Source: Octopus bimaculoides (lineage: Eukaryota). From it: a stretch of 64,000 nt of DNA. The stretch spans positions 73,815,939-73,879,938 of the forward strand of contig NC_068986.1 in assembly GCF_001194135.2 (NCBI RefSeq). The letters are read 5' to 3'. The translations under genes and the position numbers were made by a program. The notes under the pieces are model-generated. The model was not told the DNA's origin. It was given only the letters and a program-made list of their open reading frames with translations, and searched no databases. Positions 17 through 58,825 of this stretch are shown here, piece by piece. How positions within the stretch are numbered: the stretch's first letter is position 1; the number at the start of each line of letters is the position of its first letter.

Positions 17-502
17 CTACACCTTAGCCCGTTCATGGCATCTGATTTGGCTTTTTAAACCAGACAGTGTTTTAAAAAAACACCCACACAGATTGCACCT
101 CTGATTTGCACTACCAATACGTGCAAGTTAGTTCTGCTCATTGTGGATCTTAACATGTCTTTTAAGACCCCCATTGGATTTGCAAACCCTCTGGCACACA
201 CCACATTCAAACGTGTGCACAGGCATATAATCAGAATAGCTGATTGAAGTTTGTTTTCCATGGGTTCTCAAGTGAGATTTGAGGCCAGCCAAAGACAGAC
301 ATGGTCTGTCACAGACGGTGCACACAAAAAGGTCCTTGTCATTCACCTTCTCGATCTTTACATTTTTCCTTAAATATCTCTTGAGCCCTGCTTGCATCAT
401 CCTGGCTTCTTCAAACGCTTTCACTCCACTCCACACCCTTGTTCGCCATCCAACTCGTTGGCGATTTTCATTCTCTGTCTTCCCTTCTTTGGACTTTTCC
501 AA
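17..502 (-). mobile_element. 3' end of an RTE-clade non-LTR retrotransposon ORF with three C-terminal C2H2 zinc fingers (one in-frame stop); 5'-truncated
   Basis: GWRTRVWSGVKAFEEARM matches the RTE post-RT motif (W...G...FE..R). It is followed by CTVCDRPCLSLAGLKSHLRTH and CGVCQRVCKSNGGLKRHVKIH. Reading through TAA at 128-130 in the same frame gives LARIGSANQR-CNLCGCFFKTLSGLKSQIRCH-ERAKV, with a stop at 17-19. Confidence 0.75.
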
Positions 503-722
503 TATTTCTGACGAAGATCTCTGCTCGAAACGTTAAATCCTTTCTTTTTTCTTTCCTTTCCAGAGCGTCCAATAACACTGTACTTATTCCACGTCCTCGC
601 ATTGTTTTTTCGTGTTTTTTCTTGCTTGTTCATGTTGAAATTGTTTATATATACTTATATATATATATATATATATATATTTATNNNNNNNNNNNNNNNN
701 NNNNNNNNNNNNNNNNNNNNNN

Positions 723-8227: not shown

Positions 8228-8423
8228 CTATGAATAGGACAGAGCACATGCACACATACATACACACACACATGCACTACGTGCACACACACATACACAC
8301 ACGCGCACGCACACGCACACACACACACACACACACACTTGCATGCACATATGATGAAGCTGATATATATCCACGTACCTGTACATACATATACATTCAT
8401 ATTTACAGACATATACACACATA

Positions 8424-8475
<52 letters not shown>

Positions 8476-8485
8476 NNNNNNNNNN

Positions 8486-8550
<65 letters not shown>

Positions 8551-8574
8551 CACAGACATAGGTATCTGTCTTCC

Positions 8575-8605
<31 letters not shown>

Positions 8606-9324
8606 TATATGTGTGTATGTATGTGTACATATATGTCTCCTCTCTCTCTATACATATATATATATATCTATACATATTTGTCTCCCCCCTCTCTCTCACT
8701 CTGTACACACACACACACACACGCACACACACACACACGCACACACGCACTCACACGCGCGAGTGTTTAACCACATATGTGGATGCATAAATTTGTATCC
8801 ATATCCATGTATGTGTCGATATGTGTGTGTGTGTATGTGCATGAATAGATACACATATATAAACAATTAAAAATACAGAATATATTTATTTGTCATCTAA
8901 AAAAGAGATGTCTAGAATTTTGTACAGGAATTTATGGACACACACATACAACCCATACAACCTTCCATCTAAGAATACAAACGCAGTCTCTTTACACATC
9001 TGTCTTTATCAATCTTGTTTTGTTCTCACATACACATAGTCTATCCAATGCCCATACACTTAAACATATTCATGCATAGCTGTATATACATTAGCATACA
9101 AAATATTTACATATCTATTCGCAGAAGTCAAAATTTGTTAATTGTTTTTAACTGAATTTCATTCACTCAGTCACTCACTCCCCCCTTTCTCTCTCTCTCT
9201 CTATATCTATATATATATATATATATAAACACATATATATATACATATATAAATATGCATATAAACCTATATGTATACATATATATACATATATATAAAT
9301 ATATAAGCATATATATATATATAA

Positions 9325-9367
<43 letters not shown>

Positions 9368-9507
9368 CATATGCATACATATATATATATATATACATGC
9401 ACATATATATGTATACATACACACACACATATATATACACACACATACATATATATAAACATACATATATGTATACATGTATAATATATATACCAATATA
9501 TATATAN
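8228..9507. repeat. Compound microsatellite field: (CA)n, (TA)n, (TG)n, (CT)n
   Basis: Directly visible; abuts N-gaps at about 8477-8485 and 9507-9893. Confidence 0.95.
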
Positions 9508-16744: not shown

Positions 16745-17200
16745 AGAAACTGATAGTCTGCTATTCACATAACAGTAGTAGTCCTTCGAAGCTGATAGTA
16801 TATAATCATGGTTTCAATTCAGGAGATATTGGCATGCTTGGCTACACCAGTGTCCTGTCCTGTCACTGGATGTGCATGGTTTACCGCAGATATCTCTGGT
16901 GGTATAAGTTTAAGATTATAGTAGTATTGTCTATAACTTGTCCGGATTCCAGAGCCATATAAGAGAGCAGGTACAACAATTGCCATATATGCTATAAGTT
17001 TACTTGTTTGTTTGAAATCATGACCTTCATATACACATCTTCTCAGATGTCCAAGGGTTACATTGGTACATTTTATTCAATATTTGATTTCCTTAGCAAT
17101 ATCAGTATCTTTATAGATGTTTGCTCAGATATTGCAAGTGCCATCTGTCCATGTACCTGAATGACCAGACAAATTTATTGTTTCTTGGGTGGCTGTTGAT
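16745..17200 (-). mobile_element. Decayed RTE-clade LINE reverse transcriptase C-terminal region
   Basis: Patchwork translation DIAKEIKY*IKCTNVTLGHLRRCVYEGHDFKQTSKLIAYMAIVVPALLYGS...YHQRYLR*TMHIQ*QDR...IETMIIYYQLRR follows the RTE pattern KEI..RI..A...FGRL..RV.....TKI.VY.AVVLPTLLYGSETW...HQRCLR.I..I.WQDR. Confidence 0.75.
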
Positions 17201-21299: not shown

Positions 21300-21790
21300 A
21301 AGCTTTTAACTTAAACTTTAACTTTAGGTCATCTTATGCTGCTCAGTGCGTTGGGTAACAAGCTTCCCCCACTGGGTTCACATCCATTTCATGTCATGCT
21401 GATTGTCTTCAGGTCAGTTTCAAATGTGTTCCACCTAGTGATCTTTGGCCTAACCCTTTTATGTATGCTGAAGGGAGGTACCTAAGTCAGGACTTTTTTT
21501 GTGTGTTGTTGACTGACTCTACTGAGAATGTGGCCAGCCAGATGGAATTGGTGCTCTGCTACAATTTCTTGCAGTTGTTGTGACCTTACTCTACTCAGAA
21601 TCTCCTCATTTGTGACATGATCCTGCCAGCTGACCTTCAGCACTAAACTAAAGCAATAAACTTGATAACTTATAGCTTCAAATCCCACTTCTCTGCCCTT
21701 CAGAAGATCACTATGAAAGCAGCACCATGAAGCCAAAATAAATTTTGAGTGAAACTGTTTGGTAGAAAACAACAAATATTATTCACTAGT
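21300..21790 (-). mobile_element. 3' end of an RTE-clade LINE (RT C-terminus, stop and short-repeat tail)
   Basis: LKVSWQDHVTNEEILSR...HLAGHILSR...LT*VPPFSIHKRVRPKITRW...DLK..., then QWGKLVTQRTEQHKMT*; followed by AGTTAAAAGTTTAAGTTAAAAG. Confidence 0.8.
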
Positions 21791-27995: not shown

Positions 27996-28040
<45 letters not shown>

Positions 28041-28270
28041 AATAAGTGTGTGTTTTTGTGTCTGTGTTTCTGTGTTTGTCCCCCACCACCACTTGACAAC
28101 TGGTGCTGGTGTGTTTATACCCCTGTAACTTAGTAGTTCAGCAAAAGTGATGATAGAATAAGTGGCAGGCTTAAAAAAAAATATTTCTGATGCCACTTGA
28201 TTTGACTAAGAAGTTCTTCAAAGTGGTGTCCCAGCATGGACACAGTCTAATGACTGAAACAAGTAAAAGA
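27652..28270 (+). mobile_element. Family A SINE with ~170 bp of extra sequence in its central microsatellite
   Basis: Head AGGTGCAGGGGTGG at 27652; body resumes at the (CA)n/TGTTTGTCCCC block; tail TAATGACTGAAACAAGTAAAAG. Confidence 0.7.
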
Positions 28271-46715: not shown

Positions 46716-47931
46716 TTCGGTCATCCCATAAATAATGTGGGATTTTTACACTTCTTTTATTTTTCAAAATTAAGATAAACAAAGTTCTTTTCTAATCTAA
46801 AATATTCTTCCATCTATCTGGTAGACTTGCAAGGCCGCTCTTTCAAAATTCACTTGTTCATGATGAAAAATATTCCTCCAGTGCTTTTCTGACTTCGTCT
46901 ACATAATTCACATGTTTCCCATCCTAATGATTTTGAAGACTGTGGAACAAATGATAATCAGATGGGGCAATGACCCGCGAATATGGTGGGTGAGGCATCG
47001 TTTCTCATTCAAACTGCTCCAGCCTTTGGGATGTCTTCCTTGCTGTATGTGACTGAGCACTATCCTGATGGAAGAACACCTTTCGTCTTGAAACCAAAGA
47101 TGGTCATTTTTCTTCTAGCACTGACTTAATCTGCTCAAGCTGTTTGCAGTAGATCTTTGTTATCGTTTGGTTTGGGTTTAAAAGTTCAAAGTAGACTAAA
47201 CTTTTCATATCCCACCAAACAGATAACAGCACCTTACGTGGGCAGAGACCTTCTTTAGCCTGGGGTGCCGGTGTTTCTCCTTTCCCTACCCACTGTCTTC
47301 GGTACTTGACATTTTTATAGAGAACCCATTTCTCGTCACCAGTCACTATTCAGTTTAAAAAAGGTTCATTCATGAAACATGACAGTAAAGCAGAGCACAC
47401 ATTCACTCTCTGCGTGTTATTAGACTTGGAAAGTTTGTGAGGAACCCATTGACTCAATTTGCTGATTTTTCCAATGGCATGCAGGTGTCGACAAATGGTT
47501 GAATGACCAAATCCAAGCTTATGATGGTATTTTGTTCCACCAGGGTTTGCAGGACATCCTTGTTGAGCTCTACAGATCTTCCAGGATGAGGCTCATCTTC
47601 TAGGTTGGAGTTTTCGGCTCGGAATTTCTGGAACCATCGTTGACACTGGCTTACGCTTATTGTCTGGTTCTCATAAACTTCATTAATACTCCTCACACTT
47701 TCTGTTGCATTGTTGCCTTTATTGAACTCCTAAAGCAAAATATGCCGAATATGCTCGTTTGTCACTTCCATTATAGTTTTGAAAATTAACTGTTAAAATC
47801 GAACTGCACTGTTCAAAACTTGCACTAAGAATAAGTTTTATAGCAAGTTGATGCAGGTAGTTTATCCCATCCCCCTCTGACTTTTAGTTCACACAATTGA
47901 AAAAAACTGCATTATTTATGGGATGACCCAA
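46716..47931 (-). mobile_element. Full-length (1216 bp) inactive mariner DNA transposon
   Basis: TA-flanked TIRs: TTCGGTCATCCCATAAATAATG (46716 onward) and the reverse complement of TTGGGTCATCCCATAAATAATG (ending 47931); TA at 46714-46715 and 47932-47933. Confidence 0.92.
46790..47771 (-). pseudogene. Mariner DD(34)D-type transposase pseudogene
   Basis: MEVTNEHIRHILL*EFNKGNNATES..., QRWFQKFR, EDEPHPGR, MTGDEKWVLY, RKVLLSVWWD, FHQDSAQSH, HPPYSRVIAPSDYHLF, LPDRW; several stops and frameshifts. Confidence 0.9.
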
Positions 47932-56551: not shown

Positions 56552-57129
56552 TATATTTTATATTTGGTTTCCCATGCTAGCATGAGTTAGATGAATATGT
56601 ATTACGAAGGCGTTGTTGTTATAGCTGGTTGCCCTTTCTGTCACTTATCCTTACTGGGTTTTCAGATAAGGAAGTTTTCAATCCGCTCTTCTTTGAAAGT
56701 ACAGTACAGTGCTGCTGGATGACTCATTGATAGCTCATTGCTATATTTTGAAAAAGGACAAAATGCAAACGCCACATAAACACATACCAACAAACATAGA
56801 CCCACTCATATACATGCATTTGAACATACAGACACACACTCAGACACATCTAGATATGTGATACACTTCATACGGTTTCTATCAACCACATTTACTCCAA
56901 AGTTATTGGTTGGTTTCAATCTATAATAGAAGACACCTACCCATGCCACTGTGTGATGGGATTGAACTCGACAGCATGTGTTTGCACAACAAATTTCTTA
57001 ACCACACCACCATGTCTGTACCTAAGTATATACATATGTGTGTATGTGTGAGAATGCATGTGTATTTATCAGTAGCTATCTACAGTTACATTTTTAATAT
57101 GTATGTATACATATTTTTACATATAGCTT

Positions 57130-57171
<42 letters not shown>

Positions 57172-57715
57172 GCATGCATGCTTACATATTCTTCTTCAGC
57201 AATCGATTGGAGATTGCAAGTTTCAGCAAACAACAGACACCCACACACTCTGCAAACATGCACATACATATGCACACACATAAAAATATATATCTGTATG
57301 ATGTAAACATACACACATGCATACACACACATACACTCACAGTCATACACATACAATCACATACATACACATGCATACATACATGTTTGTTTGTTTTTTG
57401 CATATGAAAACAGTTAAACATTAAGTTGAAGGATTACTTAATACTTTTGAGTGAACTATAATATTTATTTTTTTACTTACTGTCAGAGACCGTCTAAAAG
57501 TAAATAAATACCAACAGTAACCATGGAATTTCATGGTTACTTTGAAAACTCAAAGATGGATGGAAATTTATTGAGAACAGCAAGGAATCATTTCTCTTGA
57601 AATTTTTTTTCTCTCTAAAACAAATGAATTTTGAGATGGTGTAAAACTTCACATAGGTGGTATTGTAGCTGCCCGCCCCTGAGCTGTAAATTATATAAAA
57701 ATATACCAGTAATAT

Positions 57716-58132
57716 AGGTGCAGGAGTGGCTGTGTAGTAAGTAGCTTGCTTACCAACCACATGGTCTCGGGTTCAGTCCCACTGTGTGGCACCTTGGGCA
57801 AGTGTCTTCTACTATAGCCTAGGGCCGACCAAAGCCTTGTGAGTGGATTTGGTAGACGGAAACTGAAAGAAGCTTGTCGTATATATATAAATGTATGTAT
57901 GTGCGTGTATATGTTGTTTAGCTGTATTTATCCCCACAACATCGCTTGACAACCAATGTTAGTGTGTTTAGGTCCCCGTAACTTGGCGGTTCGGCAAAAG
58001 GGACCGATAGAATAAGTATTAGGCTTACAAAGAATAAGTCCTGGGGTTGATTTGATTCGACTAAAGGCCGTGATCCAGCATGGCTGCAGTCAAATTACTG
58101 AAACAAGTAAAAAAAATCAAAAAATAAAAGAG
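57716..58132 (+). mobile_element. tRNA-derived SINE, family A, full length
   Basis: AGGTGCAGGAGTGGCTGTGTAGTAAG ... AAATTACTGAAACAAGTAAAA. Confidence 0.88.
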
Positions 58133-58352
58133 TAATATAGGCACAAGCATAATAGTTCTAAGTTTGGTTTCACTGCAGAGTAACATGGACTATGGTCTAA
58201 TATAGCTTTGACTTTGGTGTTTCTCCCTCTCCCTTTCTCTTTTCCTCTCTCTCTCTCTCACACACACACACTTCTTTTCATTTTAATTAGGACTACTCTT
58301 ATGTTGAGTGAATTAAAATTATATGAACATAAAATATAATTATATACATACT

Positions 58353-58500
58353 CGGTGGGAGTAGCAAATATTCGAATGAGACTTTCGAAGACTGAAGTGA
58401 AGAAGGGTTCCATGCCAACGGCGGTCGAGCATGGGTCAATCTGTCCTAAGAAGTGGGCGAAAGCTTCCATGAAGGGCGCTGGATCCGTTGCGAACGAACG
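58353..58500 (+). pseudogene. 28S (LSU) rRNA fragment, retroposed pseudogene
   Basis: GGTGGGAGTAGCAAATATTC...GAAGTGAAGAAGGGTTCCATG...CATGGGTCAATCTGTCCTAAG matches the conserved eukaryotic LSU segment GGTGGTAGTAGCAAATATTC...GAAGTGGAGAAGGGTTCCATG...CATGGGTCAGTCGGTCCT (recalled, not searched). Flanked by TACATACT direct repeats at 58345-58352 and 58501-58508. Confidence 0.88.
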
Positions 58501-58544
58501 TACATACTTTCCTTATATACATCTTTTCAATGAATACACATGAA

Positions 58545-58825
58545 GCCAGTGACCCCTGACTGGCTCCTGTGCTGGTGGCACGTAAAAAGTACCATCCGAA
58601 TGTGGTCAATGCCAGTGCCGCCTGACTGGCTCCTGTGCCAGTGGAACGTAAAAAGCACCCACTACACTCTCAGAATGGTTGGCATTAGGAAGGGCATCTC
58701 GCTGTAGAAACCTTGCCAGATCAGATAGGAGCCTGGTGCAGACTACTGGTTTGCCAGTCCTCAGTCAAGCCGTCCAACCCATGCCAGCATGGAAAACGGC
58801 CGTTAAATGATGACGATGATGATGA
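58545..58825 (+). mobile_element. Family D repeat with (GAT)n tail
   Basis: Ends CCAACCCATGCCAGCATGGAAAACGGCCGTTAAATGATGACGATGATG. Confidence 0.8.

What the first reader, a model, noticed from the sequence alone, without database searches (positions are those of the whole stretch)
58345..58508. Tailless 28S rRNA retropseudogene whose 3' end appears to lie at the hidden break
A 148-bp GC-rich, CpG-retaining piece of LSU rRNA sits in AT-rich DNA between perfect 8-bp direct repeats (TACATACT), with no poly(A) tail. That is the signature of target-primed reverse transcription of a non-polyadenylated RNA. Relative to the vertebrate sequence as I recall it, differences are compensatory (TTCGAA/TTCGAA at 58371-58376 and 58384-58389; CCATGC/GCATGG at 58410-58415 and 58429-58434), so the template was a functional, divergent rRNA. 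The fragment stops just after the conserved GTCCTAAG...GAAGGG block, inside the D7a region where protostome 28S is cleaved into alpha and beta halves. Inference: a LINE enzyme, plausibly RTE given its abundance here, primed on the free 3' end of 28S-alpha, leaving a genomic record of the processing site. Tailless retropseudogenes are described in mammals; I know of no description tied to the hidden break in molluscs.
Basis: partly seen in the sequence, partly recalled or inferred. Interest (0 to 1): 0.78.

Follow-up and report, generated by a model that had tools for sequence, protein, structure and literature searches.

The report
Dead 28S rRNA fragment insertion
A 148-base piece copied from the animal's own large ribosomal RNA was pasted into AT-rich DNA of one species after it split from a relative that still shows the empty site; it is an ordinary decaying insertion, and I found nothing that ties its end to the 'hidden break' of the ribosomal RNA.

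Summary
Window 58353-58500 is a sense-strand piece of eukaryotic LSU rRNA (Rfam, E 1e-18). It has no A-tail and lies between perfect TACATACT repeats. A related species (coded organism C) has a single-copy contig with the empty site and one TACATACT, so this is a true insertion with an 8-bp target-site duplication. RNA reads of the same species give the living 28S. It is colinear with 58351-58488 apart from 13 differences, 8 of them in CpGs, which fits decay after insertion.

The hidden-break reading is not supported. Colinearity stops at 58488. The last 12 nt (TGCGAACGAACG) do not match what follows in the living 28S. 94-97% of RNA reads that reach 58488 run on, with a median of 45-73 nt, so there is no dominant RNA end there. 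RNA contigs run on by 32, 81, 101 and 324 nt. The break itself could not be mapped because no 28S reference could be fetched. The RTE attribution is untested.

Most likely this is a LINE-driven, tailless retro-insertion that started inside the exposed D7a segment. It is a new member of a known kind and of modest interest.

The parts
58345..58352 (+). Left copy of the target-site duplication, TACATACT. Its last two bases, CT (58351-52), also match the living 28S (…GCAGATCT|CGGTGG), so there are 2 nt of microhomology at the 5' junction and the duplication is 6-8 bp.
   Evidence: the upstream 28S sequence comes from loose ends of DNA and RNA contigs; single copy in the empty site of organism C
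58353..58488 (+). Sense-strand copy of 28S rRNA, Rfam LSU model from about 1456 to about 1575. It covers the GTPase-associated-centre helices, the next hairpin and the start of expansion segment D7a. It is 5'-truncated and 3'-truncated. It differs from the living 28S at 13 positions: 58359, 58377, 58383, 58393, 58400, 58412, 58432, 58439, 58442, 58454, 58470, 58474 and 58480.
   Evidence: RNA reads; 8 of the 13 differences lie in CpGs of the source; CpG count falls from 17 to 9
58489..58500 (+). 12-nt 3' tail, TGCGAACGAACG, containing (CGAA)2.5. Its origin is unexplained. It is not like the living 28S continuation (CACGAAAGCGGT…), is not an A-tail, and is not shared by any other copy.
   Evidence: local alignment score reached by 30% of shuffles; unique in the window; no other contig of A, B or C covers 58493-58501
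58501..58508 (+). Right copy of the target-site duplication, TACATACT.
58396..58415 (+). Upstream conserved marker of the protostome hidden-break interval (Natsidis et al. 2019), 2 mismatches. The downstream marker is not in the insertion.

Best explanation
This is a dead, non-functional retro-insertion of an internal piece of the species' own 28S rRNA, made once in the lineage of organism A after its split from organism C.

Inferred steps:
1. A LINE-encoded endonuclease nicked the bottom strand at 5'-…ATGTA/TATAA-3'.
2. The freed 3'-OH primed reverse transcription on 28S rRNA supplied in trans.
3. Synthesis started inside the surface-exposed, weakly structured D7a expansion segment, either by internal initiation or after a template switch. 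The unexplained 12-nt (CGAA)n-like tail would be the trace of that start. It did not start at a natural RNA 3' end.
4. The cDNA ran about 136 nt through the GTPase-centre helices and stopped.
5. Its end was joined to the top strand, nicked 8 nt away, through a 2-nt CT microhomology. Fill-in then produced the 8-bp duplication.

Since insertion the copy has decayed neutrally, mainly by CpG to TpG/CpA changes. It is not transcribed in the libraries examined.

Shown: the insertion polarity, the duplication, the source, the decay pattern, and the lack of an RNA end at this place today.
Inferred: the RNA intermediate, the LINE enzyme, and internal initiation.
For: - Empty site with one TACATACT in organism C, at single-copy depth 58.4.
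- Filled site identical over 58286-58540 in an independent run of A, at depth 47.2.
- Sense-strand colinearity with the living 28S over 58351-58488, with no spacer or other rDNA context.
- 2-nt microhomology at the 5' junction.
- 8 of 13 differences lie in source CpGs, in a genome with CpG o/e 0.29. Non-CpG divergence is 5/104, compatible with A-C flank divergence of about 4-7%.
- B and C rDNA carry the living letters at 8 of the 13 sites; the other 5 were not listed for them. The changes therefore lie on the copy's side.
- No read is 95% or more alike to the locus, so it is silent.
- RNA reads and contigs run through the point where the copy ends.
- The continuation region folds weakly.
- In human, tailless retropseudogenes, including ten 28S-derived ones, end in single-stranded regions, and internal priming was favoured over truncated RNAs (PMC5322556).
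- Several LINE clades are recently active in Octopus vulgaris: Dong-R4, CR1, L1-Tx1 and RTE (PMC13282606). This applies only if organism A is an octopus, which I could not verify.
Against: - rRNA has no intron or A-tail, so nothing in the sequence proves an RNA intermediate rather than a DNA fragment of rDNA.
- The 12-nt tail is unexplained. It matches neither the living 28S nor any element I could compare.
- There is no visible complementarity between the start of the duplication (TACA…) and the RNA just 3' of the truncation point, which the mammalian internal-priming model expects.
- The target is not an L1-type TT/AAAA site.
- No LINE RT or endonuclease was identified in the window, so the enzyme is unknown.
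- The read evidence against an RNA end comes from libraries of unknown selection. Oligo(dT) capture could favour A-rich, unprocessed precursors.
Confidence: 0.55

Rival explanations
1. One reading: a LINE reverse transcriptase primed on the free 3' end of 28S-alpha created by the protostome hidden break in D7a, so the copy's 3' end records the processing site.
For: - The copy ends inside the interval bounded by the two Natsidis markers.
- An AU-rich stretch holding UAAU (GCAAAUAUAAUAGC) starts 17 nt after the last colinear base in the living 28S.
- There is no A-tail.
- Cephalopod papers assume a hidden break (PMC10755191; PMC9547907).
Against: - Colinearity ends 12 nt before the duplication, and the tail does not match the living RNA.
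- 94-97% of reads reaching 58488 run on, with a median of 45-73 nt, and no pile of molecule ends is reported.
- RNA contigs run on by 32 to 324 nt with no common end.
- Ends of likeness of other genomic 28S fragments are scattered.
- No cephalopod was in the Natsidis data set.
- In Octopus bimaculoides the break that was mapped is in H88, not D7a (PMC13321053).
- In human, truncated RNAs were rejected as templates of tailless copies.
Confidence: 0.12
2. DNA-level event: a fragment of rDNA, or a stray rRNA cDNA, was captured as filler during repair of a staggered double-strand break. One such case is the footprint of an excised DNA transposon that makes 8-bp duplications, such as hAT.
For: - Nothing in the insert proves an RNA intermediate.
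- 8 bp is the hAT duplication length (my own knowledge).
- A short unexplained filler-like 12-mer sits at one junction.
- DNA-transposon remnants exist in the window: a mariner-like transposase at 47107-47729.
Against: - It needs two events (insertion, then excision with capture) where target-primed reverse transcription needs one.
- Both duplication copies are perfect, whereas excision footprints usually damage them (my own knowledge).
- The insert has no terminal inverted repeats.
- The insert is strictly sense-colinear with mature rRNA and has a microhomology 5' junction, as in 5'-truncated LINE-type insertions.
Confidence: 0.12
3. Secondary copy: the template was not rRNA itself but a transcript of an older 28S-derived pseudogene, or of a mobile element that had captured this 28S stretch (an rRNA-derived SINE-like family).
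For: - Many other decayed copies of this same 28S stretch exist at single-copy depth in A, B and C.
- Some of them are transcribed.
- The copy has 5 non-CpG differences from the living 28S.
- The tail is foreign.
Against: - No other contig in A, B or C shares the 28S-tail junction or covers 58493-58501.
- The differences are mostly CpG decay, as expected after insertion.
- The copy (about 91% alike to the living 28S) is closer to it than the other copies are to this copy (16-24 differences per about 110-140 nt).
Confidence: 0.07
4. Assembly artefact or chance repeat: the rRNA piece was mis-joined into this locus and the 8-mers match by chance.
For: - rDNA is very high-copy.
- The flanks are TA/CA-rich, and identical 8-mers 156 nt apart occur at 0.9% of window positions.
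Against: - An independent run has one contig identical across both junctions at single-copy depth.
- 13 runs of organism A hold the region's words.
- The copy differs from the rDNA at 13 sites.
- Organism C shows the precise empty site.
Confidence: 0.01

Closest known systems
Tailless retropseudogenes of mammals (Schmitz et al. 2004; Noll et al. 2015, PMC5322556)
   Same: Both are copies of a non-LINE cellular RNA, 3'-truncated, without an A-tail and flanked by target-site duplications. In both, the 3' end lies in a poorly paired region of the source RNA. The human set includes ten 5'-truncated 28S-derived cases.
   Different: The mammalian class is tied to L1. It has a W/AAAA-type target motif and complementarity between the target and the RNA at the internal priming site. 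Here the target is ATA/TACATACT, no such complementarity is visible, a 12-nt foreign tail is present, and the host is a mollusc whose LINE repertoire is dominated by other clades (if the host is an octopus).
LINE-chimeric retrogenes made by template switching (Buzdin and colleagues, early 2000s; recalled from memory, not re-read here; related: bioRxiv 10.1101/2025.02.02.635956, listed)
   Same: The layout would match: the 5' part is a cellular RNA, the 3' part is what the reverse transcriptase copied first, and one duplication surrounds the whole.
   Different: In the known cases the 3' part is a recognisable L1 or Alu 3' end with an A-tail. Here it is only 12 nt and matches nothing I could test.
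rRNA-derived SINEs such as SINE28 (Longo et al. 2015; recalled from memory, not checked here)
   Same: A 28S-derived sequence dispersed in the genome by retroposition.
   Different: A SINE family shares boundaries and a tail among many copies. Here no other copy shares the 28S-tail junction.

Membership tests
Tailless retropseudogene (Schmitz 2004 / Noll 2015) | Derived from a cellular, non-LINE RNA | tested here: met
   Rfam LSU match; 125/138 identity with the species' own 28S RNA reads
Tailless retropseudogene (Schmitz 2004 / Noll 2015) | No 3' oligo(A) tail | tested here: met
   The 3' end reads …GCGAACGAACG, directly followed by the duplication
Tailless retropseudogene (Schmitz 2004 / Noll 2015) | Flanking target-site duplication (8-35 nt in their screen) | tested here: met
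   Perfect 8-bp TACATACT; single copy in the empty site of organism C
Tailless retropseudogene (Schmitz 2004 / Noll 2015) | 3'-truncated relative to the source RNA, at an internal single-stranded region | tested here: inconclusive
   Truncation is shown: the living 28S runs on. Single-strandedness rests only on a weak fold of a partial sequence and on D7a being a surface expansion segment (PMC6925239).
Tailless retropseudogene (Schmitz 2004 / Noll 2015) | L1-type target motif and complementarity of the target to the RNA at the priming site | tested here: not met
   The target is ATTATA/TACATACT. The RNA 3' of the truncation is CACGAAAGCGG…, with no match to TACA….
   Marker 1 at 58396-58415. 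Marker 2 is not reached in the copy, nor in the 30 nt of living 28S beyond it.
   94-97% of reads reaching 58488 run on (median 45-73 nt) and no pile of ends is reported. RNA contigs run on by 32-324 nt. Caveat: library selection is unknown and the break itself was not mapped.
   Ends of likeness are scattered: 58430, 58438, 58449-53, 58468-70, 58473, 58477-79 and 58488-90. They were measured against this decayed copy, not against a 28S reference, and 58488 is where any longer copy would be clipped.
RTE-mobilised element | 3' end shared with, or recognisable by, a resident RTE LINE | not testable with these tools
   No repeat library of the species was available. No RT or endonuclease domain was found in the window ORFs scanned. 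The tail CGAACGAACG is unique in the window.
rRNA-derived SINE family | Many copies sharing the same boundaries and tail | tested here: not met
   Only the locus itself covers 58493-58501 in A; nothing does in B or C.

The most novel reading that the evidence does not exclude
The copy's 3' end (58488-58500) marks a minor or past cleavage or trimming site in the D7a segment of this lineage's 28S. If so, TSD-flanked rRNA fragments scattered in mollusc genomes would be a fossil record of rRNA processing ends. A sharper variant: this species' 28S is largely unbroken in D7a today, as the run-through reads suggest, and the copy records a processing state that has since been lost or reduced.
Probability: 0.1. 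Interest if true: 0.6.

Novelty: new member of a known kind. Interest (0 to 1): 0.28.

Why it matters
As it stands, this is a clean, dated example of a tailless rRNA retro-insertion outside mammals. Both the empty and the filled site are available, the duplication is exact, and there is a junction microhomology. It shows that some reverse-transcribing machinery in this mollusc can insert an RNA without an A-tail.

It also gives a small neutral-decay clock: half of the CpGs are lost against about 5% of other sites.

It would matter more if a genome-wide census showed preferred 3' ends, because that would separate internal priming from use of natural RNA ends. It would also bear on whether this animal has the canonical D7a break at all.

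Tried and rejected
1. Rfam at gathering threshold on the whole window gave nothing. The permissive whole-window scan gave only simple-repeat look-alikes of miRNA families, and its filters missed the LSU piece. Only the local scan finds it.

2. Fetching a real 28S of the species, so as to map the break, failed:
   - An exact-pattern scan of metagenome contigs with the living D7a sequence gave 0 hits.
   - Two protein searches with open frames of the reconstructed 28S found only rDNA ORFs of other eukaryotes, at most 93% identical and all divergent in D7a.

3. One read-laying run was lost to a filter on 58098-58133. A first attempt at the orthologous site was swamped by the SINE. A second, at 85% likeness, missed the flanks. 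The third, at 80% and without the SINE, found the empty site.

4. Organism B: the site was not recovered in three runs.

5. Tail origin: alignment to the living continuation was not significant. A 4-nt CGAA slippage duplication would give 9/12 matches, but that is an after-the-fact fit and I do not rely on it.

6. RTE check: Pfam on the large ORFs and on motif-picked ORFs found no RT or endonuclease. It found only a mariner-like transposase and a C2H2 finger.

7. Species identity: a search with the C2H2 ORF found no relatives, so 'octopus' remains my unverified impression. Organism names were coded.

8. hAT-type terminal inverted repeats in the insert: none.

Full report
**What is there.** The window reads TACATACT (58345-52), then CGGTGGGAGTAGCAAATATTCGAATGAG…GGATCCGTTGCGAACGAACG (58353-58500), then TACATACT (58501-08). 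A local Rfam scan places 58357 onward on the eukaryotic LSU rRNA model from position 1456, + strand, at 77.7 bits and E 1e-18. Posterior support is high up to about 58475. This stretch covers the GTPase-associated-centre helices, the following hairpin and the start of the variable D7a segment. The 8-bp repeat is exact. The insert has GC 0.53 and CpG o/e 1.25, in DNA with GC 0.25-0.35 and CpG o/e 0.29. There is no A-run at the 3' end. The upstream hidden-break marker of Natsidis et al. (PMC6925239) sits at 58396-58415 with 2 mismatches, and the downstream marker is absent. The descriptive part of the finding is therefore correct.

**Is it a real insertion?** Counting alone is not decisive in this repeat-rich window. 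TACATACT occurs 4 times on the + strand, and identical 8-mers 156 nt apart occur at 0.9% of positions, nearly all in tandem repeats. Comparative evidence settles the question.
- Public runs of the same species (coded organism A) hold the region.
- One independent run has a 319-nt contig at single-copy depth (47.2) that is identical over 58286-58540, across both junctions.
- In a related species (organism C), a 162-nt contig at single-copy depth (58.4) lies on 58259-58352 with 4 differences. It then jumps to 58514 with only TTCC in between. It reads …TTATATACATACT-TTCC-(T)ATATACATC…, which is the empty site with one TACATACT.

So 156 bp (148 bp plus an 8-bp duplication) were added in the lineage of A after the split from C. 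Organism B's site was not recovered. Mis-assembly and chance are excluded.

**What was the template?** RNA reads of organism A laid at 80% likeness give the living 28S.
- It is colinear with the window from 58351 to 58488 and differs at 13 fixed positions.
- Eight of the 13 lie in CpGs of the living sequence (seven transitions and one transversion). CpG count falls from 17 to 9. Five differences are elsewhere, 5 of about 104 non-CpG positions.
- The rDNA contigs of B and C carry the living letters at 8 of the 13 sites; the other 5 were not listed for them. The changes are therefore on the copy's side.
- Flank divergence between A and C is about 4-7%. Decay after a lineage-specific insertion explains the differences.
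- The A-T at 58412/58432 is G-C in the living rRNA. It arose in the copy by two CpG decays that happen to hit paired bases.
- Upstream, the living 28S reads …GGGTGCAGATCT|CGGTGGTAG. The CT that ends the left duplication also fits the rRNA, giving a 2-nt microhomology at the 5' junction.
- No read is 95% or more alike to the locus, so the copy is silent in these libraries.

**The 3' end.** Likeness to the living 28S stops at 58488.
- The living RNA goes on CACGAAAGCGGTTGTAGCAAATATAATAGC (0.99 agreement), whereas the copy has TGCGAACGAACG and then the duplication.
- The 12-mer is not significantly like the continuation, since 30% of shuffles score as well.
- It is unique in the window.
- It is not shared by any other contig of A, B or C. 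Only the locus itself covers 58493-58501.

Its origin is unexplained. Candidates are a lost D7a variant of the source rDNA, a start with slippage on CGAA, or a few bases copied from another template before a switch.

**Test of the hidden-break idea.** If the copy's end were the free end of 28S-alpha, RNA molecules should end within about 12 nt of 58488.
- Instead, 67 of 69, 65 of 68 and 41 of 45 reads that reach 58488 run on. The median overhang is 45, 62 and 73 nt, which is about what unbroken RNA gives with 150-nt reads. No pile of molecule ends is reported.
- The reads therefore also cross the AU-rich, UAAU-holding stretch 17-30 nt downstream, which would be the textbook place for the cut.
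- RNA contigs from four further runs run past 58488 by 32, 81, 101 and 324 nt, with no common end.

Caveats:
- Library selection is unknown, and oligo(dT) capture could favour A-rich precursors.
- Contigs persist on rare bridging reads.
- I could not obtain a 28S reference to profile coverage directly.

- Natsidis et al. sampled no cephalopod.
- Cephalopod papers only assume the break.
- The one mapped break in Octopus bimaculoides is in H88 (PMC13321053).

The hidden-break link is thus unsupported, though not formally excluded.

**Other copies.** At single-copy depth (15-90, against 10^4-10^5 for rDNA), A, B and C each carry many other decayed pieces of this same 28S stretch with different flanks.
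- In A, 19 of the 36 contigs laid at 85% are under 90% alike.
- Their ends of likeness are scattered: left ends at 58355-58389 and 58440, right ends at 58430-58490.
- These ends were measured against a decayed copy, so this is not a proper census.

It does show that rRNA-derived fragments are common here, and that none shares this copy's tail. That argues against a SINE-like family.

**Mechanism.** The simplest account is target-primed reverse transcription by a resident LINE enzyme acting in trans on 28S rRNA:
1. A bottom-strand nick at …ATGTA/TATAA.
2. Initiation inside the exposed D7a segment, by internal initiation or after a template switch.
3. About 136 nt of cDNA.
4. Joining through the CT microhomology.
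5. A second nick 8 nt away, and fill-in.

This is what human tailless retropseudogenes look like, including ten 28S-derived ones. For those, internal priming in single-stranded regions was preferred over truncated RNAs (PMC5322556). Two defining L1-linked features are not met here: the target motif, and complementarity between target and RNA. I therefore file it as working like that class, not as a member of the L1-dependent family.

Which LINE did it is open. I found no RT or endonuclease in the window ORFs scanned. In Octopus vulgaris the recently active LINEs are Dong-R4, CR1, L1-Tx1 and RTE, in that order (PMC13282606). That paper applies only if the host is an octopus, which I could not verify. 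A DNA-level capture at a staggered break cannot be excluded from the sequence, but it needs more steps.

**Verdict.** This is a new member of a known kind, and interest is modest.

Noticed in passing
window 58545-58825: A SINE-like repeat lies directly downstream of the insertion. It has an internal 40-nt direct repeat 66 nt apart and a (GAT)n-like tail. Contig depth is 10^6-10^7 in organisms A, B and C, and it is abundant in RNA reads, about 2000 per direction in 6% of a run.
   Followed up: partly
living 28S of organism A, 17-30 nt beyond window 58488 (not in the window): RNA reads cross the AU-rich, UAAU-holding stretch of D7a (GCAAAUAUAAUAGC), and one RNA contig runs 324 nt further. The canonical protostome break is not evident at this place in these libraries. 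D7a is longer than the mollusc median: marker spacing is over 122 nt against 105. This could mean that the animal lacks, or only partly uses, the D7a break.
   Followed up: partly
genomes of organisms A, B and C (contigs laid on window 58351-58490): Many other decayed copies of the same 28S stretch occur at single-copy depth. One, with left flank CCATAATTGTACATTTTCATCGTTTATTTT, is shared by B and C. One, with left flank TCGATTTGGTAGAGTCATTGCTCAAAATAT, is seen in DNA and in RNA of A. One is embedded in a 2160-nt RNA contig.
   Followed up: partly
window 58489-58500: The 12-mer TGCGAACGAACG between the rRNA part and the duplication has no identified source. Together with the preceding CGTT it forms a perfect small hairpin, CGTT-GCG-AACG.
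   Followed up: partly
window 47107-47729 (- strand): A remnant of a mariner-like DNA transposase, broken into several frames (Pfam Transposase_1 E 6e-21, HTH_48 E 6.5e-14).
   Followed up: no
window 131-532 (- strand): A 134-aa open frame with two C2H2 zinc fingers (Pfam). No relatives were found in the large protein collection.
   Followed up: partly
window 58227-58284 and many other places (e.g. 8381-8842, 9218-9434, 27998-28079, 57033-57334): (TC)n/(AC)n and TA/TG-type simple repeats. They produce sub-threshold Rfam look-alikes of mir-297, mir-3149, mir-466 and mir-1277, which are artefacts.
   Followed up: no
window 16822-17076 and 21485-21778 (- strand): Short open frames with motifs I recall from the region after the RT domain of LINEs (…VPALLYGSG…, …SWQDHVTNEEIL…). 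Pfam gives no hit, so this rests on memory only.
   Followed up: partly
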